Below are positions 9,270-47,636 of a stretch of DNA of 64,000 nt, one piece after another. Under the pieces are notes generated by a model. The model had not been told where the DNA came from and made no database searches. It saw only the letters and a list, made by a program, of their open reading frames with translations. Location of the stretch: NCBI GenBank assembly GCA_002269645.1, contig NIVC01000151.1:372001-436000 (forward strand). Reading direction: 5' to 3'. The first letter of the stretch is position 1. Each line of letters starts with the position of its first letter. The DNA is from Macrostomum lignano (lineage: Eukaryota). The position numbers and the translations under genes are program-made.

Positions 9270-17582
<8,313 letters not shown>

Positions 17583-20327: not shown

Positions 20328-22178
20328 ATGTCAACTGCTGCAATGGACGAGACCCCCAGCACCGGAGCGCTGCTGACGCAGGTCCTGGCCGCGGCTGCCA
20401 GCGAGACCACAGCCCACGGGCTCAGCAGGCTGGCGGGCCAGAGGCCGCTCTACATCAAGCTCTGCTGGCTGCTGGCCTTCCTGGCCCTGCTCGCTGTGTT
20501 CACCTTCAGCATGCACGGCTTCACAAGCAAGCTCGTCAGAGGCGAGGTCAGCACTTCCTACGAGGCCGAGGCTGTGGACTTCCAGTTTCCCGACGTGTAC
20601 TTCTGCAACAATGTCCAGGTTTCGGGCACCTACTCCGTCACGCTCGCCAGCGAGGTCGTCACCGACATCAACGCCAGGATGACCGCCTCGCTCGCCACCT
20701 TCGACTCGGCGCTGCAGCGGCTGCTCAACTCGTCGCTAGCGAACGCCACCGAGTCTCAGATCGGGCAGATGAAGCTGTACAGACTGAAGTCCGCCATCCA
20801 GTCAATGCCGTACAGCTTGCTGGTGGACCATCTCGCTCACAAGGAGCAGCAGACGGTACTGAAGAACGACAGCAAGTCGGGCGTCTCCCTCAGACCCTTC
20901 TACCACCCGAATCACCTCAAGTGTCTCAAGGTTGAGCTGACCGAGCAGAGACTCGCTGAGCTGAGCAAGGTCAACTCGGAGATCAGCTTCCAGTTCATTC
21001 TGGATCCACACTTTACCGACTTTGATGACACATTGAATGTCAGCGCGTATTCGCAGATAATGCGCGTAACCGTCCCGCTGTACAACAAAATACAAATACT
21101 CGTGTACGACTGGGACCTGGACTCGCCCTACGAGATCGACAGGCCGATGGGAATGAGGCTGTACCTGGCTCCTCGAGGCGAGTACCCGAGCAGGTTCGTG
21201 ACCAACTTCCTGCTCGCTCCCGGCAGGTCCTACAGCATCGGGCTCAGCATGCAGAGCATCAAGAAGGAGCCCGAGGCGTACGGCGGACGCTGCCTGACGG
21301 AGACTCCCGACGTGCAGTTCGTCAATCCGTACGACGGCTCGGCGTACGCGTTCGGCTACAGCAACAGCTTCTGCTACTTCTCAGAGTTTGCTCGGCAGCT
21401 GTCTGTGAACGGTGGCTGCAGTCCGTACGTGAACCCGCTGCCGTGGCAGTTCAGGCACCTGCGCTTCTGCCTGAATGCGAGCGGCCTGAACGAGTCTCAG
21501 ATCGAGTCGAACCTCCTGCAGGCGTTCACAGCTGACACGGCCGCGCTGAGCGACTTCCAGCAGCTGTGCCAGAGCAGGCAGCTGTGCGTGTCACGGAAGT
21601 ACGAGACCAGCACCTCCAGCGCGAACTGGCCCAACGAGAACGGGCAGATCCGGCTTGTTTTGAACATCATGAAGACTATTCTGGACAAATCTCCAAGCAT
21701 ATATCGGCCTGCCTGGAGAGCGTTAATTCACTCCGTGAGGCAGCACTTTTCTGCGGAAGATGGGGAGGAGGACATTTCTGATGCATAATTTATGACCAAC
21801 AAGTTCTTCTCCCGCTCGGGCCTGAAGGTGACGCTGCGCAGCCAGCAGTCGCGCAGCTCGCAGATCCGGCTGTCGCCCGGCTACTCTCTGCAGACGTTCA
21901 TCGCCGACATTGGCGGTACTGCGGGCATCTACCTTGGCTGCAGCCTGCTGAGCCTGTGCGAGCTCGTCGAGCTGCTGTACAACCTGATCGCCAAGACCCG
22001 GGGGCAGCGAAGCTCCACCAACATCGTCCGCGTGAGGCCCGCGCCACCGACGGCCAGCAGCTCGGGCACGCCGGACTGCAGCGAGGTGGAGCTGGGCGAC
22101 AAGAAGCTCAGCTCAGGAATCTCAGGAGTAGAAAATTGTTGTTCAATTAAAGCTTGTGATGGTGTGATGCTTGCTTAA
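20328..22178 (+). CDS. DEG/ENaC (amiloride-sensitive sodium channel family) subunit, interrupted by an in-frame TAA at 21786-21788
   Basis: Pre-TM1 TTAHG motif, TM1 LCWLLAFLALLAVFTFSM, FPDVYFCN, GMRLYL, Cys-rich thumb and NWP. After the stop, in the same frame: YSLQTFIADIGGTAGIYLGCSLLSLCELVELLY (TM2 with GxS filter). Confidence 0.88.
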
Positions 22179-28800: not shown

Positions 28801-31800
28801 CACCCAACATCAACCAAGGACACCCAACATCAACCAAGGACACCGAATACTCGTACCAGCCAAAGGCCGTCGGAATCAGCAGCCCCAGCCAAGGGTTTCC
28901 AACCCAGGTGTCGGCGGTCTCACCTGGAAGCCGCCGAACTGGGCGCAGCCGCGGTCCGGCCAGTAGTCGGGCAGGCCGGGCTCGCCGGGCCGGGCCAGGT
29001 TGACCAGCCCGGTGGCGCCCGTCTGCCACACCAGACGCCAGAACTCGCCGATGGTGGCGGTCAGCGGGCTCTGCGTGAGGATGTGGCCGCCGCCGCCGCC
29101 GCCGCCGTCCCCGCGGAGATGCCGCGGCAGGCGGCTGTCCTGGACGAGGCTAGCGTTGATGTAGTCGGAGGCGCCGGGCGTGTCTGGGAGCAGTCGGACT
29201 CGGGTTCTGTCGTCTGCGAGTTTTTTTGGAGATTTCTCGATGACTGAGTCGCAGTTTAAATATGGGCCCAACTGCGGTGCTTTGAGCTCAGAAATGATTG
29301 AGTTTGGGAAGGGTTGAGATTGGGAAGGGTTGAGATTGGGAAGGGTTGAGATTGGGAAGGTTGAGATTGGAAGGTTGAGATTGGAAGGTTGAGATTGGAA
29401 GGTTGAGATTGGGAAGGGTTCAGATTGGGAAGGGTTCAATTGGGAAGGGTTGAGATTAGGAAGGGTTGAGATTGGGAAGGGTTCAGATTGGGAAGGGTTG
29501 AGATTGGGAAGGGTTCAGATTGGGAAGGGTTCAATTGGGAAGGGTTGAGATTGGGAAGGGTTGAGATTGGGAAGGGTTGAGATTGGGAAGGGTTGAGATT
29601 GGGAAGGGTTGAGATTGGGAAGGGTTGAGATTGGGAAGGTTGGGAAGCGGCTAGATGAGTTTGTTCAATCCGCAGAAACCGAGGGATTCCTTTAATTCGG
29701 TTTGGACACAGCCGTTCCCTGGGGAAAAGCTTAAAACAGCTGTCAGGCAGGAGACGGAGGGCAGACAGAGAGATGGGGAATGAAGCTGGACTCACACGGC
29801 AGGCGGTCCGGCCGCCGGTTTTTGTCGGCGTTTTCTGGCCGGGTGGCTGCGCTGAACAACCGGCCGTCCTGCTGGTGCGGCTGCCGCGCCGCTTCCTGCA
29901 GCTCCTCCCATTCCTCGCGGAGCTTCTGCTTGTCCGACAGGTGCATCTCCATGTAGTCCTGGGAGCCACGGTTGCGGGTGGGATTTCTTTCTTAGCTTCT
30001 GGTTGGCTGGCTGGGTTCCCAGAGTCATCCAGACTTAGAATACTCCCTTCTTATTATGACGGTTGCTCCAATCTAGAAATAATAACTGATCAGATCCGGG
30101 GATTCCCTGAAGTCTAACAATAGTCAAGTAGATTGGATTTGGGGATTCCCTGTGATCTAAAAATAGGCAAGTTGATTAGTTTGGGATTCCCTGTGATCCA
30201 AAAATAGGCAAGTTGATTAGTTTGGGATTCCCTGTGATCCAAAATAGGCAAGTTGATTAGTTTGGGATTCCCTGTGATAAAAAATAGACATAACTAATTT
30301 TGGGGATTCCCGTGATCTAAAATGCATGAATCTCCGGGTTTCAAAGTAAATATGTTGCAAATAGCAGTTAGTTGTCCTGAATTCTGGGGATTTCTTGATG
30401 ATCTGTAAAAATCGTTGGTTGCTGCCACGACGAAATGCACCATGAGATTTCCTTCTAAAACAGCAATCCAGACTCAGAGACAGCTTTTTTCATAATCAAA
30501 ACCGGCGAACAGACGAAACTGAAATGCTCACCAGGATGATGTGAGCAGTGCGGATGTCCAGCTCTGCTCGCAGAGGTTCCTGGCACCTGTGGATAATTAA
30601 CATCACCAGGATGGCTCATTAACAACTGACAGGACATCCGCAATAAACTCTAGTTTTGTGCAAACAGGCCAGCTCTGCACAGCAAAAAGTTCGTCTGTCA
30701 CGAGCAGCGAAGAGAAGCGGTGCCCTGCTACTCTATTTTTAGCATTCGGAAGGGACGAATTAGGCCGGTTTGATGGAGTTGCCAGGGGAAAGGAGGCCAG
30801 TATTTGACAGGGACAGGGAGCATGGAACAGGAAGGGAGGGCGATGGGGAGGGTGAACAAGGGTGGCTGGCTGGGAAGGTCTCAGCGTCTCAGCGAGAGCT
30901 TCTCATCAATGCAGCCCGATGGCAGGGGGATAAGCAAAGTAGGGGATCTCTTTACAGTGCGAGTTTGAGAGCAGCTGCAGCAGATTACGCTTACAATACC
31001 GGCTCACTGCAGCTCGAAATTCTTGCTCACAGCTCTTCTCTTGCACCCTGAAACCTCTCCTCTTGCACCCTGAAACCTCTCCTCTTGCACCCTGAAACCT
31101 CTCCTCTTGCACCCTGAAACCTCTCCTCTTGCACCCTGAAACCTCTCCTCTTGCACCCTGAAACCTCTCCTCTTGCACCCTGAAACCTCTCCTCTTGCAC
31201 CCTGAAACCTCTCCTCTTGCACCCTGAAACCTCTCCTCTTGCACCCTGAAACCTCTCCTCTTGCACCCTGAAACCTCTCCTCTTGCACCCTGAAACCTCT
31301 CCTCTTGCACCCTGAAACCTCTCCTCTTGCACCCTGAAACCTCTCCTCTTGCACCCTGAAACCTCTCCTCTTGCACCCTGAAACCTCTCCTCTTGCACCC
31401 TGAAACCTCTCCTCTTGCACCCTGAAACCTCTCCTCTTGCACCCTGAAACCTCTCCTCTTGCACCTACCTGGCGTTGAGGATGACCAGGTCGGAGCTGCG
31501 GCCCCAGTCGCAGACAGTCGCAGGGTTGTCGCGCACGATGACTCTGAGTTCGAGTTGCTGCTGCTGCTGCTGCTGCTGGAGACTCCGCAGACTCTGCAGG
31601 CTCATGAGCTGTTGCTGCGGCTGCCGCAGCTGCTGCGAAGGCGGCGGCGACGGCTGGCGCTGTGGCGTCGCGTCGGCGGCTGAGCTGTCGGCCAGCAGCA
31701 GCGAAGATTCGTCCGTCTCGTCCTGCGGCAGGCCGGAGTCGCTGGACTTGCAGTCTCCGGTGGCGGCCGCTGCCGACACGCCACCGGCTGCTGTGACGGC

Positions 31801-31911
31801 GCCCTCACCGCCGGCGTTGGTGGCCGACGAAGCGGTGGCAGCGGCCGCGGGGGAGCCGAAGCTCAGCAGCCGGTCCAGGTCGAAGTCCGTGGAGAAAATC
31901 GACTGCAGCAT
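25885..31911 (-). CDS. IA-2: IA-2/PTPRN(N2)-type receptor tyrosine phosphatase-like protein (pseudophosphatase), cytoplasmic part; 5' end unresolved
   Basis: Exons (minus): ~31911-31469, 30586-30532 ([19 protein letters not shown]), 29958-29796 ([26 protein letters not shown]), 29213-28924 ([23 protein letters not shown]), 28320-28130 ([22 protein letters not shown]), 27564-27511 ([17 protein letters not shown]), 27429-27282 ([20 protein letters not shown]), 25956-25885 ([23 protein letters not shown]). The HCSDG signature and [12 protein letters not shown] are IA-2 hallmarks. Confidence 0.92.
26180..26570. repeat. 11-bp intronic array (TGATGTATCTC)n
   Basis: Direct reading. Confidence 0.93.
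27645..28115. repeat. 23-bp intronic array (GGCTGAGCAGAGTGTGACACCCC)n
   Basis: Direct reading. Confidence 0.95.
28408..28842. repeat. 20-bp intronic array (CATCAATCAAGGACACCCAA)n
   Basis: Direct reading. Confidence 0.95.
29300..29645. repeat. 16-bp intronic array (GGGAAGGGTTGAGATT)n; a 41-bp array lies at ~30135-30320
   Basis: Direct reading. Confidence 0.93.
31030..31465. repeat. Perfect 22-bp array (CTTGCACCCTGAAACCTCTCCT)n starting immediately inside a 5' splice site
   Basis: Direct reading. Confidence 0.95.
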
Positions 31912-31974
31912 TGCTGGGGCCTGGCGAGTTAGAGAGGGGCTCAGCTGCTCGTCAGCCTCGTAGCTGTGTACAAC

Positions 31975-32410
31975 CGAATGGTTGCTGAGTGCACCCAATA
32001 GTTTCTGAGCACACCCTCTGGTTGCTGTGTGTATCCAACAGTCGCTGAGCACACCCTCTGGTTGCTGTGTGCACCCAACAGTCGCTGAGCACACCCTCTG
32101 GTTGCTGAGCACACCCTCTGGTCGCTGAGCACACCCTCTGGTTGCTGAGCACACCCGCTGGTTGCTGTGTGCACCCAATAGTCGCTGAGCACACCCTCTG
32201 GTCGCTGAGCACACCCTCTGGTCGCTGAGCACACCCTCTGGTTGCTGTGTGCACCCAATAGTCGCTGAGCACACCCTCTGGTTGCTGAGTACACCCACTG
32301 GTTGCTGAGCACACCCACTGGTTGCTGAGCACACCCACTGGTTGCTGTGTGCACCCAGTAGTCGCTGAGCACACCCTCTGGTTGCTGAGTACACCCGATG
32401 GTTGCTGAGT
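31975..32410. repeat. Composite ~20-bp array (GCTGAGCACACCCTCTGGTT / GCTGTGTGCACCCAATAGTC)
   Basis: Direct reading. Confidence 0.9.
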
Positions 32411-33099
32411 AAACCTAATGGTTGCTGCTGAGTACACCCTAATCCATTGAGTAACACCTGAAGATAGGGTGTACTCCAACCCCCAACCCCCAATGTGAAT
32501 CTGAGCTATCAATCTCAAGATTGAATAAGCCCCTGAGGGCAAAAGTGCAAAGCTGAGAACTGATGAGGCATGAAAGCAGCTGACGCCGTCCCGCCATTCG
32601 CCACGGAGCCAAGCGTGGAGTCGCTGATTTAATCTCAGCTGCCGCGCAGGCGGATCGATCTGCCTCCCTCCCAGCTCGGGGCTGCTGCTCTCAGCTTCTC
32701 CATTTTCTCAGCGGGGTGGCTATTTTTAAACCTCTGTCCCTCTCCGGTCTGCTCTCAACCTGCTGCACCGCGGCGCCCAACTCATTCATCTCTGGCCTCG
32801 CAGCTCTTGTATAGCTGCTATAGTGCTAAAGTGCAATGCAGATTAGCATGCTCTCGGCGTTCATCAGCGAGAGCAGCTGACTTTTATATTCATGACTTCT
32901 GATTGCAGGCAGCCTTTCAGCATAGCCCAGTCACCGAGTTGAAGGCACTTGAAATTCCTTTGAATGGCACATAATTTGCTTGGATTGATTGTTTACTTTG
33001 AGAAATCAGTGACAAAATACCCTCCCATGCCATGAGAGCTAGATGAATGCTTGAGTACTATTTACATTAGCGGAGTGCCTAAGCGCCAAAGTGTGGGTT

Positions 33100-33560
33100 A
33101 AGTTAAGCGCCAAAATGAGTGTCTAAGCACCAGAGTGAGTGTCTAAGCACCAGAGTGAGAGTCTAAGCACCAGAGTGAGTGTCTAAGCACCAGAGTGAGA
33201 GTCTAAGCACCAGAGTGAGAGTCTAAGCACCAGAGTGAGAGTCTAAGCACCAGAGTGAGAGTCAAAGCACCAGAGTGAGAGTCTAAGCCCTAAAGTGAGG
33301 GTATAAGCCCTTAAGTGAGGGTATAAGCCCCTAAGTGAGGGTATAAGCCCTACAGTGAGGGTATAAGCCCCTAAGTGGGGGTATAAGCCTAAAGTGAGGG
33401 TATAAGCCCTAAAATGAGGGTCTAAGCCCTAAAGTGAGGGTATAAGCCCTAAAGTGAGGGTATAAGTCCTAAAGTGAGGGTCTAAGCCCTGAAGTGAGGG
33501 TCAAAGCGCCCAAGTGAGGGTTTAAGCCCTAAACTGAGGGTATAAGCGCCAAACTTGAGC
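33100..33560. repeat. 20-bp array drifting from GTCTAAGCACCAGAGTGAGA to GTATAAGCCCTAAAGTGAGG
   Basis: Direct reading. Confidence 0.88.
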
Positions 33561-35397
33561 CGCCACTTACAGCAAAAGCGCGCCGCCGGATCGCCGAGTT
33601 TATTAGCTGAGCAGAAGCTGCGCCGAGGCCAAGGCTGAGCAGTGAGTAGGCAAGCAACTCCAACTTTTGCTATTCTGTCCGCGGACAGCCGCTGCAGGAT
33701 TTGTAAGCAGGGGAGGCGGAGGTGGGGAGGCGGGGGATGAGGGGCAGGGGGCGACCACCTCCCTAGCCCGCCAGTTCTTTCTCACCCGTCGACTTTTCTC
33801 ACCCCGGCAGGGGGGGGGGCGTCTGAATGAACCCTCTCTGGGGAGGGAGGGACCTGGGCTAAAAATAGCCCGCGGGTTGGGGTGGTGGGGCGGGGATCAG
33901 CAGCGGCAGGGAGTACAGCGGGGCGGCCAGAAACTTCATGCCCGCGCTTTCAATTCTCCGGAAAGTCAGGCGAAGGCTGGGGGGAACACTGCAGGGATGC
34001 GGACAGCTACAAGCTTATGCACTGGCACAGGAGACAGGCTGAGCAGCCCTGCCGAATGGAGGGTCAGCTTAAAGCCAAAGCAAACAGATTGACGGCGGAA
34101 CCCCCGCCGCCCTCGCTTCGCCCGGGCTTTTGCACTCTTGTCTGCCCCCTCGAGCGCCTTAATCCCCCAGCCCCACCCACTAATCCTTCTCGAACCACTT
34201 GGAGTCGCCCATGGGAGACACTTAGCAGAAGACTCGCTCGCAGGCACTCAGCGCTGTGTTTTACTGGAGCGAGCCGCACTCCCGGCCTGCCCGACTCGTT
34301 TTGGCCTGCAGTCAGCCGCGAACCCCCGCGGGGATCGCGCGGTTTCTTCCGGCCGAATTGAAGCGGCAGGCATGGGAGAGCACGCGTGCGGCCCCGCCCT
34401 GATGCTCCGCTGTCTGCTTTAATGCTGCGAGTCCGGATTGCTGAACTGCAAAGCAATGGCCAGGAGAGTCTGATCCAGCTAAATGAGTCATTCACTTGGT
34501 GTGGCACCGCTGCGGAAGGCAACTTCCTGCGTGAGGTGCTTTGCAGCTCCCATGATGGGCGAAGGTTGGGCCCGCCACTCTCTGTGTGCTTGAGGGCACC
34601 ATAATGCGCTGGGGCGCCACTCTTTGTGCGTTGGCGGTGCCAAAATGTGTGTTGGGGGCGCTACTCTGTGTTGGGGGCGCTACTGTGTTGGGGGCGCTAC
34701 TCTGTGTTGGGGGCGCTACTCTGTGTGTTGAGGCTGCAAATCTTTGTGTTGGGGCGCCTCCTTCTGTGAGTTGGCGGCGCCAAAATGTGCGAGTATGTTA
34801 GGAGCGCCATGTGTTGGGATGGCCATGTGTGTGGGGGGGCCATGATGTCAGGGGGCGACACAAGCCGCCAGTGTTACATGTACATGTGGGGCATCACAAA
34901 ACGCAGCTCAAGCAACCGTTAATTTTTCTTGACAGTCGCTCTTGCTTTGCCGCAGGTCCAGTGCAGCCCTGCGGGGGCACAGCAGGGGGCCACAGCTGAG
35001 CATTTAAACGAGCTGAGCAGCCAAAGCTGATCCTGCATGATGAAGCGCAGGGCTGCTGGCACTGCCTAAGAGTCACGCAAAAGAAGCTTGACTTTCCCCT
35101 GCCACATCTCCGATCCCAAAATCCTTTGTCTCGCCCCGTCGCTACATGAGCTCGTAATTGGGATTTTTATCCGCTCGGCACGGGATCGGGTTGCACGCGA
35201 GTCGCGCTGAAAACATGGGGACTGCAGCTCCCGCGGCTCTCAGGTTTCCATGCATTGATTTCCATGCAGTCTCATTTCTGTTGCCTCACTGAGCCCCGGG
35301 GCCAGAGATGGGGCGGGAAGGCGGAGCAGAAAGATCATCATGAGATTCTGCAAACATTATAGAGTACCTTATAGTTGGCAGCAGTTTCCTCAAAAGA

Positions 35398-37998
35398 TTC
35401 AGAACTCCATGAACAGTCGTTTGAGCATGGATATAAGATACCTTTACAGATTCAGAACTCCATGAACAGTCGTTTGAGCATGGATATAAGATACCTTTAC
35501 AGATTCAGAACTCCATGAACAGTCATTTGAGCATGGATATAAGATACCTTTACAGATTCAGAACTCCATGAAGTCATTTGAGCATGGATATAAGATACCT
35601 TTACAGATTCAGAACTCCATGAACAGTCATTTGAGCATGGATATAAGATACCTTTACAGATTCAGAACTCCATGAAGTCATTTGAGCATGGATATAAGAT
35701 ACCTTTACAGATTCAGAACTCCATGAACAGTCATTTGAGCATAGATATAAGATACCTTTACATTCAGAACTCCATGAACAGTCGTTTGAGCATAGATAAA
35801 AGATATCGCTCCAGATCTTAGATCTAGAAATCCATGAACAGATGAGCATTCATTCCACTAGCAGCTGATCGCTCCAGATCTTAGATCTAGAACTCCATGA
35901 ACAGATGAGCATTCATTCCACTAGCAGCTGATCGCTCCAGATCTTAGATCTAGAACTCCATGAACAGATGAGCATTCATTCCACTAGCAGCTGATCGCTC
36001 CAATCTTAGATCTAGAACTCCATGAACAGATGAGCATTCATTCCACTAGCAGCTGATCGCTCCAGATCTTAGATCTAGAACTCCATGAACAGATGAGCAT
36101 TCATTCCACTAGCAGCTGATCGCTCCAATCTTAGATCTAGAACTCCATGAACAGATGAGCATTCATTCCACTAGCAGCTGATCGCTCCAATCTTAGATCT
36201 AGAACTCCATGAACAGATGAGCATTCATTCCACTAGCAGCTGATCGCTCCAATCTTAGATCTAGAACTCCATGAACAGATGAGCATTCATTCCACTAGCA
36301 GCTGATCGCTCCAATCTTAGATCTAGAAATCCATGAACAGATGAGCATTCATTCCACTAGCAGCTGATCGCTCCAATCTTAGATCTAGAACTCCATGAAC
36401 AGATGAGCATTCATTCCACTAGCAGTTGATCGCTCCAGATCTTAGATCTAGAACTCCATGAACAGATGAGCATTCATTCCACTAGCAGCTGATCGCTCCA
36501 ATCTTAGATCTAGAACTCCATGAACAGATGAGCATTCATTCCACTAGCAGCTGATCGCTCCAGATCTTAGATCTAGAACTCCATGAACAGATGAGCATTC
36601 ATTCCACTAGCAGCTGATCGCTCCAATCTTAGATCTAGAACTCCATGAACAGATGAGCATTCATTCCACTAGCAGCTGATCGCTCCAATCTTAGATCTAG
36701 AACTCCATGAACAGATGAGCATTCATTCCACTAGCAGCTGATCGCTCCAATCTTAGATCTAGAACTCCATGAACAGATGAGCATTCATTCCACTAGCAGC
36801 TGATCGCTCCAATCTTAGATCTAGAACTCCATGAACAGATGAGCATTCATTCCACTAGCAGCTGATCGCTCCAGATCTTAGATCTAGAACTCCATGAACA
36901 GATGAGCATTCATTCCACTAGCAGCTGATCGCTCCAGATCTTAGATCTAGAACTCCATGAACAGATGAGCATTCATTCCACTAGCAGCTGATCGCTCCAA
37001 TCTTAGATCTAGAACTCCATGAACAGATGAGCATTCATTCCACTAGCAGCTGATCGCTCCAGATCTTAGATCTAGAACTCCATGAACAGATGAGCATTCA
37101 TTCCACTAGCAGCTGATCGCTCCAATCTTAGATCTAGAACTCCATGAACAGATGAGCATTCATTCCACTAGCAGCTGATCGCTCCAGATCTTAGATCTAG
37201 AACTCCATGAACAGATGAGCATTCATTCCACTAGCAGCTGATCGCTCCAATCTTAGATCTAGAACTCCATGAACAGATAAGCATTCATTCCACTAGCAGC
37301 TGATCGCTCCAGATCTTAGATCTAGAACTCCATGAACAGATGAGCATTCATTCCACTAGCAGCTGATCGCTCCAATCTTAGATCTAGAACTCCATGAACA
37401 GATGAGCATTCATTCCACTAGCAGCTGATCGCTCCAATCTTAGATCTAGAACTCCATGAACAGATGAGCATTCATTCCACTAGCAGCTGATCGCTCCAAT
37501 CTTAGATCTAGAACTCCATGAACAGATGAGCATTCATTCCACTAGCAGCTGATCGCTCCAATCTTAGATCTAGAACTCCATGAACAGATGAGCATTCATT
37601 CCACTAGCAGCTGATCGCTCCAATCTTAGATCTAGAACTCCATGAACAGATGAGCATTCATTCCACTAGCAGTTGATCGCTCCAGATCTTAGATCTAGAA
37701 CTCCATGAACAGATGAGCATTCATTCCACTAGCAGCTGATCGCTCCAATCTTAGATCTAGAACTCCATGAACAGATGAGCATTCATTCCACTAGCAGCTG
37801 ATCGCTCCAATCTTAGATCTAGAACTCCATGAACAGATGAGCATTCATTCCACTAGCAGTTGATCGCTCCAGATCTTAGATCTAGAACTCCATGAACAGA
37901 TGAGCATTCATTCCACTAGCAGCTGATCGCTCCAATCTTAGATCTAGAACTCCATGAACAGATGAGCATTCATTCCAGTAGCAGTTGATCGCTCCAGA
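35398..37998. repeat. Compound satellite: 50/53-bp units (~35398-35800) followed by ~35 copies of a 62/63-bp unit sharing the core AGAACTCCATGAACAG
   Basis: Direct reading; no unique spacers, so not a CRISPR array. Confidence 0.96.
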
Positions 37999-39699
37999 TC
38001 TACGGCCCCTGCTTCGATCCCATGCGCTGTCATGCGCTGGGATATCATCCCAGGCACTCATTTTTGCGCCGCAGGCTCGCATTTTAGCGCCCCAGGCACT
38101 GTATTTAGTCACCCTGAAGCAAAATTATTGATTTCCATAACGGGTCACAAGGTTGGGCGAAGGGAACAAAGCATTGGCATGCCCCCAACAGCTTTTGAGG
38201 GGACATGTCCCCCCTGTTCCCCCCCCCCTTGGGTTGCGTGTTGTGTGCTCAGGAGCCAGAAGATTGGGCAGAAACGCCTCAGTTCTGGCTCCGAGACGAT
38301 GCCGCAACAATGCCCGCAGCGCTCCTGAAAATATAACTTTGATCTTGGAGCAGCCGTTCAGATTGCATAGGCCAGCTCCTCAGGTGTGAAGCAGGAAGAC
38401 GGAATGCGAAGCTGTGTCGAATTTCAGCTACAAGCAAAAAGAGCCAATTTCGGTCTAGAAACTTGATTGGGTTACATTTATGCTAATCATATTTATTGAA
38501 TCGGCCACAACAATCAGGGCAACAGAAAAGCATCAAACAAGCCGCCAGTACAACCGAGCCCCGAGCTGGGGAGCCGGGCAGAAAAAGCTGCAGAAGCGAA
38601 TCAAACGAATCAAGTCCTGCCCACGATTAACCGCAAAGCCACACCCGAGATTAGCCGGCAGCCAAAAATACAGTGGCTATGAGAACAAAAATTGAAGCGC
38701 AGGAATAGACAAACAGAATACAAGAGAGAGTAAATATTTGCTGAATAACATCAACAATTAAATAAGATGCTTAGGCGATAAAAATGGCAAAATTGCAGAC
38801 ACTGGGCATTGCACTACTCGCTACAAACAATTGCAAGCAAATTGCTTTATAATGTCTATTTTAATTAGAAAATAATAAGCTAGATGCGCTACTATATTTG
38901 CCAGCTAAGTAGTAGCGAGCGAACCTATATTCAACAGCAAAGTCTAAAATTGGATTGCATTGGTAAAATTCTAAAAAAATCGAATACAAAAAGCACTGAT
39001 GAGCTGCAGACTGAGCCCAAGCGTAACTGCGGCCCGGGGGTGAGACTCAGAGAGCGAAACAGCAGACCCGCAGAGACAGCAGCTGCCAGCGGCGATTCGC
39101 GGCAGAGAGCCCTGGCAGACCTGCTGGCTGGCACTGAGGACAGTTTTGTAATGGGCAGGTGAGGGACGGCTTGCATCCAGTCTGGGGATCTGGGAAACTC
39201 ACCAAGCAACTGATGATCTGGCAGACACCCATCAACTGGGGTCTGGGAGGCTGGCCCAGCAACTGGGGATCTGGGAGGCTGGCCCAGCAACTGGGGATCT
39301 GGGAGGCTGGCCCAGCAACTGGGGATCTGGGAGGCTTACGGTCTCAGTGAGCAGCACAGAGCAAGACAGAGTTCAGCTATGCTCAGCAGACTGCCGGGCG
39401 GGCATCTCAGGCCGCAAAGGCGACCCAAACGCAAGTTCAGCAACAGCAAGCAACAAAAATAAATTGCATACAATGGAAAACGCGGAAGCAGTGGAGCGCG
39501 GGTTCTCGAACACAGAACAGCTAAAAGGCTTGTCTGAGGCAATGCGCGCAGAGCAGTATTATGCTAAGGTTGCAGTTAACCCATGTGGCAAGGCGGGGTC
39601 GGGCCTGGAGTCTGTGAAGAATTTCGCTACGCAAAAACATTTTTGGATCGCCCTCGTGCCGGGCCTGCGCACTGAGAGATGGAGGGCGTGAGGAACGGA

Positions 39700-40575: not shown

Positions 40576-43500
40576 TCAGACCCGGTGAGCGTTGAAGGCC
40601 TCCCGCTTCTTGGGGTCCGTCGTGTAGCCGCCGATGAAGGAGCCGTCCTCGGCGAAGCGACCTGCAGAAGTGGGCGGGGAGGGGCGGAGCTGGCAGTGGG
40701 GAACCGGGGATCTGCGGAGCTGGCAGTGGGGAACCGGGGATCTGCGGAGCTGGCAGTGGGGAACCGCGGATCTGCGGAGCTGGCAATGGGGAACCGGGGA
40801 TCTGTGGAGCTGGCAGTGGGGAACCGGGGATCTGCGGAGCTGGCAGTGGGGAACCGGGGATCTGCGGAGCTGGCAGTGGGGAACCGCGGATCTGCGGAGC
40901 TGGCAATGGGGAACCGGGGATCGGTCTCTGCGGAGCTGGCAATGGGGAACCGGGGACCTGCGGAGCTGGCAATGGGGAACCGGGGATCGGTCTCTGCGGA
41001 GCTGGCAATGGGGAACCGGGGACCTGCGGAGCTGGCAATGGGGAACCGGGGATCGGTCTCTGCGGAGCTGGCAATGGGGAACCGGGGACCTGCGGAGCTG
41101 GCAATGGGGAACCGGGGACCTGCGGAGCTGGCAATGGGGAACCGGGGACCGGTCTCTTGCGGAGCTGCACTCAGCCAGATTGGCAGGCCTTGCCCAGCAC
41201 TCCCCGGGGACTGCGAGCCTCCCTTCTACGAGTATACAAGTAGCCGGCCTTTGCCTGCTTAGAAGATTTCCAAAACAGAACCGAGCACATTGCATGGATT
41301 ACTTAGACTGCTCAACTTCAAAAACGGCTCTTCAATCAAAGTAACAACCGAGATTATCCAAATCGCAGAGCTCACACAGAGCTGCGTTAGAAATATTTCA
41401 AGTGCGGGATCAGAATTCCTCAATTCTCGTTTCGGGATCTGAACTTGAGCGGTGCGGAATCTGAACTACTCATTAGTGTGGAATGCGACACGCAGATTCG
41501 GGCAAAGGTTTGACACTCCTAACTCCATGGAGATCACTCCATAACGTGAAACGAGTAAAACGAGTAATGAGCACGCTTGTATCTTGATAGAAAAGCCACG
41601 TAAACAGTACAATGTCAGGGGCACTAGCCAGACAAAGAGCCTCTGGCTCAAGAAGAGAGCTAAGATGCTAAATAGAGCAGCCAGTCATGGATTAATAAAT
41701 TATGCTAGCTAGCAGGCAGCACGAACGGGCTGGGAGGCAACCAGTTCACACACGGAGACCGCAGAGCCAGCCAACTATTAACAGCCAGTCGAATTATTAC
41801 AATAATAGTCAGACAGGCCATGCAAGCGCGCAATTTAGAGCGATTCTTCAGCCATATTTAGCGATAAAGTCGGAAATGTTGCAGAGCGGCATCAGAGTTT
41901 CTCAGCAGTGCACTTGGCGCAGCAAAGCAAACCCGAATTCTTTCCGTTTTCCTCTGCAATGTTGCAGCAGCGCAAGATGTGTCGCGGGAAATTAATGCAG
42001 GTGCATGATTTTTAGGCAGACGAAGTTGCTGAGCCTTTTTTAGAAATCAAACCTTTGCCCGTATCTGCATATCGCATTGCATTTCGAACGCTTTATATAA
42101 TACAAGGCCGAAATTCCACATATTTGTGAGCAGGATTCTTTCACAAGACCGAAATACTTGTGAGCAGGATTCTTTCACAAGACCGAAATACTTGTGAGCA
42201 GGATTCTTTCACAAGACCGAAATACTTGTGAGCAGGATTCTTTCACAAGACCGAAATACTTGTGAGCAGGATTCTTTCGCAAGACCGAAATACTTGTGAG
42301 CAGGATTCTTTCACAAGACCGAAATACTTGTGAGCAGGAACCTTTCACAAGACCGAAATACTTGTGAGCAGGAACCTTTCACAAGACCGAAATACTTGTG
42401 AGCAGGAACCTTTCACAAGACCGAAATACTTGTGAGCAGGATTCTTTCGCAAGACCGAAATACTTGTGAGCAGGATTCTTTCACAAGACCGAAATACTTG
42501 TGAGCAGGATTCTTTCGCAAGACCGAAATACTTGTGAGCAGGATTCTTTCGCAAGACCGAAATACTTGTGAGCAGGATTCTTTCACAAGACCGAAATACT
42601 TGTGAGCAGGATTCTTTCACAAGACCGAAATACTTGTGAGCAGGATTCTTTCGCAAGACCGAAATACTTGTAAGCAGGATTCTTTCACAAGACCGAAATA
42701 CTTGGGAGCAGGATTCTTTCGCAAGACCGAAATACTTGTGAGCAGGATTCTTTTGCAAGACCGAGATTTCACATAGTTGTGAGCAGGATTCTTTCACCAG
42801 ACCGAAATTTTACATATCTGTGAACAAGAATATTTTCCAACACTGTACAAGATTCAAGCAATGTGCAATCATCAGACTTGGGAAACTACAAAACTTTATT
42901 TGGAAGCACACTATTCGGAAATAATTTAGGCATATGATGAGACTCGGGACATCTAAAACTGCAGCCCCATCCGGGTGGGCAATAAAGAACTTCGGCGGGC
43001 CAGTTTCTCCTTCCAATGCTGCATCTGCAGCTCCACCCGCAGCCAAATAAAATGCGCTGCCATCTCCGCCCCCAGAGCCAAGCGAAACACGTCAGCCTGG
43101 AAGAGTCGCAGAGCCCGCCACCCCAGTGGGAACATATTTTTAATTTATGACCGACAGACGCGCAGCGGCTGACTGACCGGGATGAAGGACAAAAGCAGCC
43201 ACTGCAGTTTAGCAGCCGCGAAGCCCGGGGACACCCGAGCCACTCACTCCCTCTTGCAGGCCGAGGCCCGCCGGCCGCATGCGTCACCACCGAGCGGCCG
43301 CCACCCCCGGCCCGCAGCCAGCGCTAACAGGATCAGTCAGGCGAGCGCAGACAGGCGTGACGGATGGATAAATCATATTTACTACTCGCGAGCGCAGCGC
43401 CATGACTGGGTGCGGCCCAACTATAGCTCGTATATGCATGCAATACAGCAGATTCTTTTCTTTGAATTTCGCATTGAAAGACGGCGACCTTAACAAAACA

Positions 43501-44667
43501 GTTTGACCTTGGAGCAGTGGTGCCGCTATGAGTGAGGCCCTATTGTATTCACTGGCCCGTTGAACTAGCAAGGGAACCTCTAGCCATAGGAGCTGGCTTT
43601 CATATTTCATATCTTTCAGTGCAAAACAATTATTGATTTCCTGCAACAATTCAACAGGCCAATAGCTCAGCAATAGACAAGGCCCGGCCCCCAATCACTC
43701 ACCGACATCAGTGCCGACAACCCAATCACTCACCGACATCAGTGCCGGCAACCCAATCACTCACCGACATCAGTGCCGGCAACCCAATCACTCACCGACA
43801 TCAGTGCCGGCAACCCAATCACTCACCGACATCAGCGCCGGCAACCCAATCACTTACCGACATCAGCGCCGGCAACCCAATCACTCACCGACATCAGCGC
43901 CGGCAACCCAATCACTCACCGACATCAGCGCCGGCAACCCAATCACTCACCGACATCAGCGCCGGCAACCCAATCACTTACCGACATCAGCGCCGGCAAC
44001 CCAATCACTCACCGACATCAGCGCCGGCAACCCAATCACTCACCGACATCAGCGCCGGCAACCCAATCACTCACCGACATCAGCGCCGGCAACCGAATCA
44101 CTCACCGACATCAGCGCCGGCAACCCAATCACTCACCGACATCAATGTCGTCATCGTTGCCGTACTCGTCCAGCTCCTGGTCGTCTTTGCTGGCAGCCGA
44201 GATGCTGGAGCTCAGGGACAGCCGAGAGGCTTTCAGGCCGCCTTCCTCGGGCCGCTGGTACTCCTTGAACTGCTCCTCCTTGGCCTCCAAGTCCGGGTGG
44301 TTGCCTTGCTGTCGCTCCTTCTCGTCCAGCATGTACGTCTGGCCGGAGTCGCGGCGCAGCAGGAAGACCAGAAGGGCGGCGATCAGCAGCAGCAGCAGGA
44401 AGGCGATCAGGATGGCCACCAGGATGCCCGGCCCGGCCGAGGCCACCTCCAGCACCGGCTTGCCCTGCGGGACCGAGCGGGTGGTGTCGGCTTGGGGAGG
44501 CAGTTTCAGACACACACAGAGACAGACAGAGAGACAGACAGACAGAGAGACAGACAGACAGACAAAGATACAGACAGACAGACACAGACAGACAGAGAGC
44601 CAAACAGACAGACAGACAGACAAAGATACAGACAGACAGACAGACAGACAGAGAGCCAAACAGACAA

Positions 44668-44714
<47 letters not shown>

Positions 44715-47636
44715 GAACCAAACAGACGGAGACAGACAGAGAGACAGACAGACGGACAGACAGACAAGCCTCACCTGAAAGTCTATACCCATTACGATGG
44801 GCCGGAGGCTGGAAGCCACATCAAAGTCCGTAGAGTAGAAGCACATGCGGTCGGCGCGGCAGTCTTTGTCGCCGGCGGCCACATCGCGCGAGCCGTGTCG
44901 GTCTTTATGCAGCTGAAGGTTAACCAGGCTGACCCGGCTGGGGTAGCGGAAGTTGAACACCGGCGTGAGGGTCTTGCGCTTCTGAAGCTCGACCAGCACC
45001 TTGTCGTCGGTGATGGGGTGCACCTACAGGCAGCGGGATGGGAGTTCGAACTCGACTGAGGGCAGAGTTTTGGCGACATCAACCTACAGGCCGAGGTGAG
45101 GCTAGCAGGCGGAGTGCACAGCAGCCAGCGTTCTTTGGGCTCTCGAACATGGTGGGTGTCAGCACTGGGGGAGCCACTGCAGGAACCAATCCAGGGCCCA
45201 CACCAGGAATCACTTCATGGGTCTTTGCGTGGAACACAATACATGTAGAAACTACTCTAGTGACCACAACAGGGTCACTCCAGTAGTCATAACAAGGGTT
45301 ACTCCAGTGGCCACAAGGGTCACTCCAGTGTCCACAAGGGTCACTCCAGTACGTGGTCACAGCACAGCAGGGTCACTCCAGTAGTTACAACAAGGGTTAC
45401 TCCAGTGGCCACAAGGGTCGCTCCAGTGGCCAAAACAGGGTCACTCCAGTGGCCACAGCAGGGATCACTCCAGTCACCACAGCAGGGATCACTCCAGTCA
45501 CCACAGCAGGGATCTAGGGCCCACTCCAGAAGAGGACGGTGCGATACCGGTCTAGCTGGTTGAAACCGGCTACCTTGAACCTGACAAGACCAGTTGGAAC
45601 CAGCAGCTCACCTTGAACGTCAGCCTGTTAGTATCGCGTTCGAAGGTAATTTCGGACACGCCCTTCTGGTTGATGATGTTCAGGTCCTTCAGATAGACAT
45701 CGTCAATCTTAAACATGGCCATCACCTCCACGCCGATGGCTTTGAGCTTAGCGGTGACCTCGGGCTTGAGAGCCACGGAGAACTCGGCCCCGGACGCGGT
45801 GGAGCAGCGCTGCTCCGAGCAGTTCCTGGCCCTGCTCAGGTCAAAGCTGGCAGGAGTTGGCCGATGTAGGAAGAACACGCTGCTGCCGGACTCCACGACG
45901 TATTTCGGCATGCCGATCTTCTCAGCGTCCGCTTTGCCGACGGTGGCCCGGCAGATAACGCGGTGGGTGAAGTCCCTGCCGGTCGAGGAGTCACCGGGCG
46001 GCACCCTGCTCACCGTGATGTTGATGGTCCGCCTGTCCGTCAGGGAGGTCAGCGTGTCCACCGACACCGTCCGCGAGCCAAACAGCGAGTTGAACTCGCT
46101 CATCCGCAGCTCCTTCCAGTCCGCGCTTTCGCGAACGGCCGGCGAATAGAACACGGGCTCGGCGGTCACTTGAGCGACGTTGTTGAAATAAGTGGAGCAG
46201 TTGTAGGACATGGACTCGCCCTCCATGGCGTAGATGACGGCTGGCAGGCTGCCGGACACTTCGCTGGGGCCATCGGACGGCTTGTAGCTGAATTGCGGCA
46301 TGCTGACTACGTCCGCGTTAAATGTGAACTTCTTGTTGCCCGCCTCGCACATGTACTGGCCGGCGTGACGGTTCTGCGCCGTCGGCGGGAACTCGATGAT
46401 GTTGCCTGTCTTGGAAACCCGGATGCCGTCAACCTCGGTCCAGTCCTTGGTGCTCATGGGGGTCAGAGCCTTCCTCCTGTGGTCCTTGCTGGTGTGCGTG
46501 AACTTGTAGACAGTGAGCGGGTCCGAGCAGATGATGGGGCACACCAGCGGCGTGTGGTCCATGCCGGAGAATATGGAGATCGGCTCCTCATTCACGTTGT
46601 CGGGCAGAGAGCAGTCAGGCGCGTTGACTCCCTGCTTGGTGTACATCACCTTGTCTCTGGGGATCTTCTGCTCAACGGAGAAGGTCCGGTCGTATGGTTG
46701 GCCCTGGCCGGAAAAAGACAGCGTGGCGCAGATGCCGACCTGCGTCGGCGAGCGCCCCTCGAAGGAATTGAAAATGCTGGCGCTGAGGCCGTAGGCGGCG
46801 TAGTGCAGCCTGCCGGTGGCCAGGTTCAGGTGGATGTGCTTGAGCAGGTTCTGCGCCTTGTCGTCAAGCTTTGAATGATAATTCACGAACAGGGCCGCCC
46901 GGGACACCTGGTAGTTCTCGCAGGACCCGGCATCGAAGTTGAGCACGGCTCCCATGTTGATCTTGGCCCTGAGAAACGGCGGGGCATTTCTTAGCGCGTT
47001 GACCACGGAGGGGTCGAGAAATTCCTTAAAGCCGAAGTTGGACTCCATCTTCAGGTTCTTGAGAAACGACACGGCATCCGGCGTCAGAAAGCGAGTAGAG
47101 ATGGACGAGCCGCTGGACGTCTTGCTTCTGTATTTGCCCAGGGGTTCCAGACTCCACACGAACAGGCTGTTGGACACCAGCTTCACCTCCGGCTGTCCGG
47201 CCACAAGCACTTCCACCAACAGCTCCAGCTTGCTGTTGAACACGTCGTAGGAGCCCAGCGGCGTATCCAGCAGCTTGAACTCGTAGGAGCCCTCCTTGGC
47301 ATCGATGATGCGCACCGAGAACGGGATCTGCGTGCTCTCGCACCGCTCCTGGTGGCGGGTCACCGATGACAGGTCGATGGTGTTGAAGGTGGCGCTATTG
47401 GCGCACTTGTACTTGAGAACGGCCGAGTGGCCGATGTCCGCCCTGCCCTCCAGGGCGATCTTGATCTTCAGGCTCTTGTCGGGCATTAGGAAGGCCATCA
47501 TGTTCGGGCTGCCGACCTCCCAGACTTCGTCCCAAGAAAGGAGAATCTTGCCAGTCTGGGAGAAGTTAAAGCGCACCTTGTCCTCTGCAGCCGCGGCTGC
47601 CAGGCACAGCACCAGGACACAGCCGAGAGACAACAT
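40576..47636 (-). CDS. Type I membrane Ig-superfamily protein (~895 aa) with an L1CAM/neuroglian-type cytoplasmic tail (FIGGY)
   Basis: Exons (minus): 47636-45612 (signal peptide [17 protein letters not shown]; Ig-like segments with [10 protein letters not shown] and SYNC..VICRAT), 45023-44775, 44464-44137 ([25 protein letters not shown]; [20 protein letters not shown]), 40661-40576 ([15 protein letters not shown]). Phases are compatible. Confidence 0.88.
40685..41155. repeat. 30-bp intronic array (TCTGCGGAGCTGGCAGTGGGGAACCGGGGA)n
   Basis: Direct reading. Confidence 0.93.
42125..42795. repeat. 34-bp intronic array (GACCGAAATACTTGTGAGCAGGATTCTTTCACAA)n
   Basis: Direct reading. Confidence 0.95.
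43692..44142. repeat. 31-bp array built from the exon/intron 5' splice junction (TGATGTCG|GTGAGTGATTG), ~14 copies
   Basis: Direct reading; the last unit overlaps the real donor at 44136-44135. Confidence 0.93.
44505..44766. repeat. (GACA)n/(GA)n microsatellite, intronic; a 21-bp array lies at ~45260-45515 in the next intron
   Basis: Direct reading. Confidence 0.93.

What the first reader, a model, noticed from the sequence alone, without database searches (positions are those of the whole stretch)
40576..47636. L1/neuroglian ankyrin-binding tail attached to a non-L1 ectodomain
Seen: the cytoplasmic tail follows the L1 pattern (juxtamembrane G-x-x-Y, FKEY, LDEYG, then [11 protein letters not shown]). 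The ectodomain is only ~770 aa, mostly on one 2-kb exon, with about two recognisable Ig-like units and a ~350-aa N-terminal region I cannot assign. Known: L1-family CAMs have 6 Ig + 4-5 FnIII domains across many exons and a FIGQY (CHL1: FIGAY) motif whose Tyr phosphorylation controls ankyrin binding. Inference: a lineage-specific receptor made by exon shuffling or extreme divergence, coupling a new extracellular specificity to the ankyrin-spectrin cytoskeleton. This is a strong candidate for an undescribed family.
Basis: partly seen in the sequence, partly recalled or inferred. Interest (0 to 1): 0.74.

Follow-up and report, generated by a model that had tools for sequence, protein, structure and literature searches.

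The report
Flatworm receptor with L1-type ankyrin tail
This is an intact gene of the flatworm Macrostomum lignano for a cell-surface protein that joins the ankyrin-binding tail of L1/neuroglian adhesion molecules to a shorter, differently built outer part; it belongs to an uncharacterised gene family found so far only in this worm.

Summary
The window is Macrostomum lignano DNA. A 4-exon minus-strand gene (47636 to 40576) encodes an 895-aa type I membrane protein. It is identical to the transcript-based GenBank model BOX15_Mlig021638g1, a "hypothetical protein".

The cytoplasmic tail is a full-length Pfam Bravo_FIGEY domain (60.9 bits, E 2.7e-16). It has both conserved tyrosines (LDEYG, FIGGY).

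The roughly 750-aa ectodomain has no Pfam hit. An AlphaFold2 model built on a paralogue alignment (pLDDT 74.5) reads as four beta-rich, Ig-like modules, only two of which show the Ig pattern in sequence. These are followed by an alpha/beta module and a Cys-loop stalk. There is no FnIII and no 6 Ig + 5 FnIII array.

An exhaustive HMMER search of 1.84 billion proteins found full-length relatives only in M. lignano, in seven paralogue groups plus one uncalled copy. Five members keep FIGxY on an 84-nt terminal micro-exon and three have lost it. The tail is the most conserved part.

The protein is most likely a recognition or adhesion receptor that recruits ankyrin-spectrin when clustered; this is inferred, not tested. 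It remains open whether the ectodomain is a remodelled L1 ectodomain or the tail was captured by another gene. I rate it a new variant of a known kind, of moderate interest.

The parts
45612..47636 (-). Exon 1 (2025 nt, aa 1-675): signal peptide (aa 1-17, 47586-47636) and most of the ectodomain (modules D1-D4 and most of D5)
   Evidence: ORF and GT donor at 45611. 100% identical to P0001. Only 2 synonymous differences from the GenBank contig.
46284..46604 (-). Module D3 (aa ~345-451): canonical Ig domain with C370...W...GQYMC430
   Evidence: phmmer hits of this stretch to obscurin Ig repeats (E 2.5e-15) and other I-set-rich proteins. Sub-threshold Pfam Ig_2/Ig_3 in paralogues. AF2 all-beta with pLDDT 72-93 by 10-residue block.
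45855..46283 (-). Module D4 (aa ~452-594): Ig-like domain with an insert (SYNC480 ... FTHRVIC562)
   Evidence: Cysteine pattern is conserved in the paralogues. AF2 gives a beta-rich module with one short helix insert.
45024..45611 (-). Intron 1 (588 nt), almost wholly 24-nt tandem repeats; absent from paralogues B, C, D, E and F
44775..45023 (-). Exon 2 (249 nt, aa 676-758): end of module D5 and the stalk with the conserved [15 protein letters not shown] loop
   Evidence: AG/GT borders. The motif is shared by the seven full-length paralogues and missing or only partial in the two distant relatives P0008 and P0010.
44465..44774 (-). Intron 2 (310 nt), mostly (CAGA)n; absent from paralogues B, C, D, E and F
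44137..44464 (-). Exon 3 (328 nt, aa 759-867 plus 1 nt): stalk end, transmembrane helix (aa 771-794, 44357-44428) and the proximal two thirds of the Bravo_FIGEY tail (GQTY, FKEY, LDEYG)
   Evidence: Sequence. Pfam match starts at aa 795. AF2 helix at 772-796 in P0001 numbering.
40662..44136 (-). Intron 3 (3475 nt, phase 1), the only intron shared with paralogues B, C, D, F and H. It holds a 31-nt x 14.7 array that repeats the donor site (43690-44144), a 34-nt x 20 array (42120-42808) and a 30-nt x 14.9 array next to the acceptor (40684-41148)
40576..40661 (-). Exon 4 (86 nt including the stop): terminal micro-exon encoding (G)[32 protein letters not shown] lies at 40624-40638
   Evidence: AG acceptor at 40662-40663. 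It falls within the Pfam Bravo_FIGEY match. Homologous micro-exons occur in paralogues B, C, D and H.

Best explanation
The locus is an intact, transcribed gene of Macrostomum lignano (Mlig021638). It encodes a single-pass type I surface receptor of a multigene family so far seen only in this worm.

Shown:
- The protein has a signal peptide, a ~750-aa ectodomain, one transmembrane helix and a 100-aa tail.
- The ectodomain is read from the predicted secondary structure as four beta-rich, Ig-like modules, one alpha/beta module and a disulphide-loop stalk.
- The tail is homologous along its full length to the cytoplasmic domain of L1-family adhesion molecules.
- The tail keeps the juxtamembrane G-x-x-Y, the F-x-E-Y site, and the distal segment that forms the ankyrin site in neuroglian and neurofascin (LDEYG ... 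[11 protein letters not shown]), including both conserved tyrosines.

Inferred:
- The ectodomain binds a partner on another cell or in the matrix.
- The resulting clustering lets the distal tail segment recruit ankyrin, and through it spectrin, to the contact site.
- Phosphorylation of the FIGGY tyrosine releases ankyrin.
- Within the family this coupling sits on an 84-nt terminal micro-exon that some paralogues have lost, so the family holds both ankyrin-coupled and uncoupled receptors.
For: - Gene model and transcript support.
- Tail homology: Pfam Bravo_FIGEY 60.9 bits, E 2.7e-16, profile positions 1-84 of 86. The same domain is found in paralogues B, C and D at 37-57 bits.
- Constraint on the tail: among the seven paralogues the proximal tail is 59% identical. 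Among the four FIGxY paralogues in the alignment the proximal tail is 69% and the distal tail 63% identical. Ectodomain modules are 35-52%. F, I, G and Y of FIGxY are invariant while x is G, E, D or N.
- Ectodomain: no Pfam Ig or fn3 hit. The AF2 model has pLDDT 74.5 and pTM 0.65. Foldseek gives 301 PDB hits at E<=1e-3, led by multi-Ig ectodomains such as MAG, Dscam1 Ig1-4, RAGE, titin and IL-18R. The viral library also returns Ig-like proteins. There are 14 ectodomain cysteines and 4 N-x-S/T sequons.
- Family: full-length relatives occur only in M. lignano.
- Mechanism, from the literature: a 36-aa distal segment of neuroglian is necessary and sufficient for ankyrin binding. A chimera with a foreign ectodomain on the neuroglian TM and tail still recruits ankyrin only at cell contacts (PMC2133023). 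[quoted passage not shown]
Against: - No binding, localisation or expression data exist for this protein.
- The Q of FIGQY is G here, and tolerance of G is not tested.
- The module boundaries come from the secondary structure of a model built on only nine sequences. No residue-level structural alignment was available.
- The ligand, and whether binding is homophilic, are unknown.
- Three paralogues do without FIGxY, so the ectodomain clearly has uses that do not need ankyrin.
Confidence: 0.6

Rival explanations
1. These genes are simply the worm's L1CAM/neuroglian orthologues after extreme divergence. On this view Ig1-4 are retained (two of them now cryptic) and Ig5-6 and the FnIII domains were lost or replaced. 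It would be a derived member of the L1 family rather than a new combination.
For: - The whole tail is homologous, not just a motif.
- The ectodomain, TM and two thirds of the tail sit on one exon in paralogues B, C, D and F, so no shuffling boundary separates the ectodomain from the tail.
- The model looks like four Ig-like modules. The best global superposition is on the Dscam1 Ig1-4 horseshoe (4xb8_B, TM 0.49 on the target, rmsd 9.3), the arrangement that, as far as I recall, L1-family proteins also use.
Against: - No sequence or profile method links the ectodomain to L1-family proteins.
- The only Ig hits are generic I-set repeats such as obscurin.
- Only one horseshoe structure appears among the top 50 fold hits.
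- D1 has a local C78-C99 loop instead of a B-F disulphide, D2 carries five helices and D5 is alpha/beta.
- Two defining features of L1 (six Ig domains and FnIII domains) were tested and not met.
Confidence: 0.3
2. The tail is an inherited relic that no longer binds ankyrin. On this view the receptors signal through the highly conserved membrane-proximal segment ([29 protein letters not shown]) or not at all.
For: The proximal segment is the best conserved part and is retained even in paralogues E, F and G, which lack FIGxY. The x position of FIGxY is not Q in any member.
Against: In the five FIGxY members, EDGSFIG-Y (EQG in D, EEG in H) and the upstream L-D/E-x-Y are retained after divergence to 39-53% overall identity. 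The distal tail is 63% identical, against about 40-52% for the ectodomain. That pattern is hard to explain without selection on this segment.
Confidence: 0.15
3. The gene model is a chimera: the FIGGY exon 3.5 kb downstream belongs to another gene or is not used.
For: Intron 3 is long and full of minisatellites. Read-through past the donor gives a stop after two codons (..DIDVGE*), so a FIGGY-less product is possible.
Against: - The transcript-based GenBank model uses exactly this junction.
- Paralogues B, C, D and H have the same micro-exon after introns of only about 60-900 nt at the same position.
- The reading frame and the Pfam match run straight across the junction.
Confidence: 0.02
4. 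The copy in this window is a decaying duplicate without function.
For: The M. lignano genome is highly redundant, and the introns are swollen with repeats.
Against: The 2688-nt ORF is uninterrupted with good splice sites. Family-conserved cysteines and motifs are kept, the gene is transcribed, and only two synonymous differences separate it from the other assembly.
Confidence: 0.03

Closest known systems
L1-family cell adhesion molecules (L1CAM, CHL1, NrCAM, neurofascin; Drosophila neuroglian; C. elegans LAD-1/SAX-7; leech tractin)
   Same: Type I single-pass topology. The cytoplasmic domain is homologous over its whole length (Pfam Bravo_FIGEY), with the juxtamembrane G-x-x-Y, F-x-E-Y, the upstream conserved Tyr (LDEYG) and the FIGxY Tyr. 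Ig domains are present in the ectodomain.
   Different: The ectodomain is ~750 aa rather than ~1100. It has no FnIII domain and at most four Ig-like modules, only two of them recognisable by sequence. It has an alpha/beta juxtamembrane module and a Cys-loop stalk. No sequence similarity to L1 ectodomains is detectable. The ancestral gene structure has 1 intron (3 in this copy), whereas L1-family genes are split into many exons (from memory). The motif is FIGGY instead of FIGQY/FIGAY.
Laboratory chimeras of a foreign adhesion ectodomain fused to the neuroglian transmembrane and cytoplasmic domains (Hortsch et al. 1998, PMC2133023)
   Same: The same logic applies: an unrelated ectodomain drives clustering and the L1-type tail recruits ankyrin at contacts. 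This shows that the tail works as a portable module.
   Different: Those chimeras are artificial constructs. Here the combination is natural, conserved and expanded into a gene family.
Generic IgSF receptors with short Ig arrays (MAG, RAGE, Dscam Ig1-4, IL-1R/IL-18R, Neph/Rst, nectin)
   Same: They are the best structural matches of the predicted ectodomain (Foldseek E 1e-9 to 1e-6).
   Different: Sequence identity is 8-13% and none carries a Bravo_FIGEY tail. The global TM scores are low, so the matches are at the level of fold class only.

Membership tests
L1 family of CAMs | Six N-terminal Ig domains | tested here: not met
   Pfam finds no Ig domain above threshold in any of the 9 family members. 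The AF2 secondary structure allows at most four Ig-like modules in 575 aa.
L1 family of CAMs | Three to five fibronectin type III domains between the Ig array and the membrane | tested here: not met
   There is no fn3 hit at E<=5 in any member. The juxtamembrane module D5 is predicted as beta-alpha-beta-beta-beta-alpha-beta at pLDDT 80-93 by 10-residue block, not all-beta.
L1 family of CAMs | Single transmembrane helix, type I topology | tested here: met
   Signal peptide at aa 1-17. One hydrophobic helix at aa 771-794 followed by RRD.
L1 family of CAMs | Conserved cytoplasmic domain (Pfam PF13882 Bravo_FIGEY) | tested here: met
   60.9 bits against a cut-off of 23.8, E 2.7e-16, profile positions 1-84 of 86.
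L1 family of CAMs | FIGQY-type motif with its tyrosine, plus the upstream conserved tyrosine of the ankyrin-binding segment | tested here: met
   LDEY859G and FIGGY880 are read directly from the sequence. Paralogues carry FIGEY, FIGDY, FIGGY and FIGNY. The Q position differs.
L1 family of CAMs | Binds ankyrin, regulated by Tyr phosphorylation | not testable with these tools
   This needs pull-down, two-hybrid or cell-recruitment assays.
L1 family of CAMs | Horseshoe fold of Ig1-4 | tested here: inconclusive
   Foldseek hit to Dscam1 Ig1-4 (4xb8_B, E 2.6e-9, TM 0.49 on the target, rmsd 9.3). No other horseshoe structure appears in the top 50, and no residue-level alignment was available.
Immunoglobulin superfamily (broad sense) | At least one Ig domain with the B-F cysteine pair and the G-x-Y-x-C F-strand motif | tested here: met
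   aa 370-430 (C...AGQYMC). phmmer matches to obscurin Ig repeats at E 2.5e-15. Fold hits are to Ig arrays.
Syndecan (PF01034) | Syndecan TM and cytoplasmic domain above the Pfam cut-off | tested here: not met
   14.3 bits against a cut-off of 25.2 in this protein. The match covers only the TM helix.

The most novel reading that the evidence does not exclude
On this reading, a flatworm lineage built a new receptor family by placing the portable ankyrin-recruiting tail of L1 behind an ectodomain of independent origin. It then diversified the family and switches cytoskeletal coupling on or off through one 84-nt terminal micro-exon. That exon has been lost twice in evolution. It may also be skippable in this gene, where the donor site is repeated about 15 times and read-through stops after two codons.
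Probability: 0.3. Interest if true: 0.6.

Novelty: new variant of a known kind. Interest (0 to 1): 0.45.

Why it matters
The L1 tail is normally found only behind the invariant 6 Ig + FnIII ectodomain. A natural, conserved and expanded family with the same tail on a different ectodomain would show in an animal what cell-culture chimeras suggested. In that view the ankyrin-recruiting tail is a self-contained module that can report any clustering event to the membrane skeleton.

The family also contains built-in controls, because closely related paralogues exist with and without FIGxY. M. lignano has RNAi and transgenesis, so these ideas can be tested. Practically, these genes should not be taken as L1CAM orthologues on the strength of their automatic 'Neurofascin/L1/NrCAM C-terminal domain' names.

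Tried and rejected
- **Tail-only database search:** 4 candidates and no hits. Even the protein itself was missed, so this reflects a limit of the word index, not evidence of absence.
- **Profile search with a masked family alignment:** it returned only three family members, so no canonical L1 of M. lignano or of other flatworms could be retrieved.
- **Sequence and profile searches of the PDB:** nothing below E 0.1.
- **First AF2 run with 3 sequences:** pLDDT 40, discarded.
- **hhalign of the six ectodomain modules against each other:** no internal repeat, with all probabilities below 1%.
- **Syndecan match:** driven by the transmembrane helix and rejected.
- **P0002 (1558 aa, 'Bravo_FIGEY domain-containing protein'):** I first took it for a larger relative. 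It is a read-through fusion of the two tandem paralogues C and B.
- **Selection test between the window and the GenBank contig:** only 2 synonymous differences, too few to use.
- **Literature searches:** nothing on this family.
- **Lead:** a Schistocephalus solidus protein (A0A183SHS7) is called 'Bravo_FIGEY domain-containing', with a signal peptide at 1-22 and a TM at 769-792, the same layout as here. Its sequence could not be fetched, so it is unknown whether the family extends to tapeworms.
- **Schistosoma 'BF' marker gene:** the paper gives 7 exons and 4164 nt, long enough for a conventional L1-type CAM, though it does not say whether that is the gene or the CDS length.
Full report
**What is there.** The region holds one gene on the minus strand.
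- The ATG is at 47636 and opens a 2025-nt exon (675 codons) that ends at a GTGAGC donor at 45611.
- Three further exons follow at 45023-44775, 44464-44137 and 40661-40576. All are bounded by AG/GT, and together they give a 2688-nt ORF of 895 codons.
- A database search identifies the product as Macrostomum lignano 'hypothetical protein BOX15_Mlig021638g1, partial', 100% identical over the whole length. The contig is NIVC01003986.1 of assembly GCA_002269645.1.
- The window is a second copy or assembly of that locus. The coding sequence differs at two synonymous sites, and the rest differs mainly in repeat copy number.
- GenBank models of that assembly come from genome-guided RNA-seq transcript assemblies (PMC5730564).

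**The tail.**
- Residues 771-794 form the only transmembrane helix and are followed by [34 protein letters not shown]...[18 protein letters not shown]|[28 protein letters not shown].
- Pfam's Bravo_FIGEY model (PF13882, the L1/neurofascin/NrCAM cytoplasmic domain) matches residues 795-882 over profile positions 1-84 of 86. The score is 60.9 bits against a cut-off of 23.8, E 2.7e-16.
- The ankyrin-binding segment mapped in neuroglian is a 36-residue distal stretch that holds two conserved tyrosines (PMC2133023). Both are present here, as Y859 in LDEYG and Y880 in FIGGY.

**The ectodomain.**
- Pfam finds nothing in residues 18-770 of this protein. Across nine family members it finds only sub-threshold Ig_2/Ig_3 matches in two.
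- Sequence and profile searches of the PDB find nothing.
- An exhaustive phmmer search with the ectodomain against 1.84 billion representative proteins gave 15 hits.
  - Nine are the protein itself and its M. lignano relatives. The named hits of this set are all M. lignano.
  - The other six hit only residues ~390-470. The ones checked are Ig-repeat proteins: obscurin at E 2.5e-15, and I-set-rich proteins.
- That stretch (C370 ... AGQYMC430) is therefore a true Ig domain.
- The next unit (SYNC480 ... RVIC562) has the same cysteine logic.
- A first AlphaFold2 run on three sequences was useless, with pLDDT 40.
- With nine family members the model reached mean pLDDT 74.5 and pTM 0.65, and most ectodomain blocks were above 80.
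- The secondary structure divides into the following modules (P0001 numbering, which is this model plus 1):

| Module | Residues | Predicted character |
|---|---|---|
| D1 | 21-170 | all-beta, with a local C79-C100 pair |
| D2 | 171-345 | seven strands plus five helices; C240 and C304 spaced like an Ig B-F pair |
| D3 | 346-452 | Ig |
| D4 | 453-595 | Ig-like with an insert |
| D5 | 596-705 | beta-alpha-beta-beta-beta-alpha-beta |
| Stalk | 706-771 | family-conserved [15 protein letters not shown] loop |

- Foldseek against the PDB gives 301 hits at E<=1e-3. The list is led by multi-Ig ectodomains, among them MAG, Dscam1 Ig1-4, RAGE, titin I9-I11, IL-18R and DIP, with cadherin-like arrays (RET CLD1-4, protocadherins) among them.
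- The viral library likewise returns Ig-like glycoproteins.
- The modules are not detectable repeats of one another.
- The ectodomain is thus of the IgSF class. It is not the L1 array: it has no FnIII, too few residues, and an alpha/beta module next to the membrane.

**The family.** The M. lignano relatives fall into seven paralogue groups, plus one uncalled copy and two distant relatives.

| Group | Gene(s) | Notes |
|---|---|---|
| A | Mlig021638 | this gene |
| B | Mlig011430 / Mlig022107 | in tandem with C |
| C | Mlig020049 | in tandem with B |
| D | Mlig015009 | |
| E | Mlig003394 / Mlig026651 | in tandem with F on other contigs |
| F | Mlig009881 / Mlig020816 / Mlig015686 | in tandem with E on other contigs |
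| G | Mlig022515 | |
| H | uncalled copy at L002:16278-19110 | lies beside E on L002 |

- Two distant relatives (P0008 and Mlig008635, P0010) are only 21-23% identical to A.
- A, B, C, D and H end in FIGGY, FIGEY, FIGDY, FIGGY and FIGNY respectively.
- E stops just before that point and has no such exon in the 3.7 kb downstream. F and G have diverged C-termini.
- A neighbour-joining tree of the ectodomains gives ((A,C),B) and ((D,E),(F,G)) with 95-100% bootstrap for the inner pairs. FIGxY is therefore ancestral to the seven groups and was lost at least twice.
- The tail is the most conserved part. The proximal tail is 59% identical among the seven groups. Among the four FIGxY groups in the alignment it is 69%, and the distal tail 63%. 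Ectodomain modules are 35-52%. This argues for selection on the tail wherever it is kept.

**Gene structure.**
- In B, C, D and F the signal peptide, ectodomain, TM helix and tail up to ..DID are one uninterrupted exon. A single short intron (85 to about 900 nt) precedes the terminal micro-exon.
- E has no intron at all.
- The intron before FIGxY is therefore old. No exon boundary separates the ectodomain from the TM and proximal tail.

**How it most likely works.**
- Shown: topology, tail homology, retention of both tyrosines, and conservation of the tail.
- From the literature: clustering of L1-type tails at cell contacts recruits ankyrin and spectrin. A 36-aa distal segment suffices. The effect survives replacement of the ectodomain by a foreign one (PMC2133023). 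[quoted passage not shown]
- Inferred: this receptor reports engagement of its own, different ectodomain to the ankyrin-spectrin skeleton, with Y880 as the switch. Paralogues without FIGxY act uncoupled.
- I put about 0.6 on this. Almost all of the doubt lies in the untested ankyrin binding, not in the identity of the parts.

**Rivals.**
- The main rival is that these are the worm's own L1 orthologues after drastic remodelling.
  - The full-length tail homology fits this, as does the single-exon continuity.
  - So does the loose superposition of the model on the Dscam1 Ig1-4 horseshoe (TM 0.49).
  - Against it are the lack of any sequence link to L1 ectodomains, the non-Ig features of D1, D2 and D5, and the fact that only one horseshoe structure appears among the top 50 fold hits.
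- A chimeric gene model and a dead duplicate are both effectively excluded.

**Comparison and novelty.**
- The protein works like an L1-family CAM on the inside. It fails two defining L1 features on the outside (six Ig domains and FnIII domains), so I do not file it as a member.
- It is present in GenBank and UniProt only under automatic names: 'hypothetical protein', 'Bravo_FIGEY domain-containing protein' and 'Neurofascin/L1/NrCAM C-terminal domain-containing protein'.
- No paper in the searched library mentions it.
- I rate it a new variant of a known kind, of moderate interest. It would interest people who work on adhesion-cytoskeleton coupling and on flatworm biology, but it does not open a long-standing question.

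**Limits.**
- The word-indexed homology tool was too insensitive to retrieve L1-type proteins. I therefore could not test whether M. lignano has a canonical L1, nor whether parasitic flatworms have this family. The Schistocephalus lead remains unresolved.
- Module assignments rest on one AlphaFold2 model, without access to its coordinates.

Noticed in passing
window 45024-45611 and 44465-44774; L005:6001-12532: Introns 1 and 2 of this gene are missing from its closest paralogues (C, B) and from D, E and F. They consist almost wholly of tandem repeats: 24-nt units and (CAGA)n. Paralogue G has four private introns at other positions and, like the terminal one, each is filled by a different minisatellite. 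Together with the tree ((A,C),B) and ((D,E),(F,G)), this points to recent paralogue-specific intron gains linked to minisatellites.
   Followed up: partly
window 43690-44144 and 40684-41148: Intron 3 begins with 14.7 copies of a 31-nt unit that repeats the last 7 nt of exon 3 plus the GTGAGT donor, giving about 15 tandem splice-donor copies. It ends with 14.9 copies of a 30-nt unit, each ending in ..CTCCGCAG (acceptor-like). Read-through past the first donor stops after two codons (..DIDVGE*), which would give a FIGGY-less protein.
   Followed up: partly
window ~29224-33630, minus strand: The next gene downstream is annotated with a protein tyrosine phosphatase domain (Pfam Y_phosphatase, 502-aa product on the GenBank contig). 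It sits beside a receptor whose tail may be regulated by tyrosine phosphorylation. No link was tested.
   Followed up: no
window 20328-21788, plus strand: A single-exon ORF of 486 aa matches the amiloride-sensitive sodium channel family (Pfam ASC, E 1.4e-24).
   Followed up: no
window 35395-38001: A satellite block: 53-nt x 8 copies, then 62-nt x 35 copies at 98% identity, between this gene and the phosphatase gene. Copy number differs from the GenBank contig.
   Followed up: no
L002:16278-19110: A further family member ('H', ending in FIGNY) lies 3.7 kb downstream of paralogue E but is not among the called genes. The reading frame changes near 18260-18305, which means either a ~45-nt intron or a frameshift.
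   Followed up: partly
proteins P0002 and P0023 (UniProt A0A1I8GV.., A0A1I8HAG3); L003:3102-12800: Two UniProt entries of 1558 and 1748 aa are read-through fusions of the tandem paralogues C and B. In P0002 the C half also lacks ~235 aa (the Ig region).
   Followed up: yes
window 16618-17415, minus strand: A 265-aa ORF hits 'grass antifreeze beta roll' and the YadA head repeat in Pfam. I suspect a repeat-translation artefact rather than a gene, but that was not checked.
   Followed up: no
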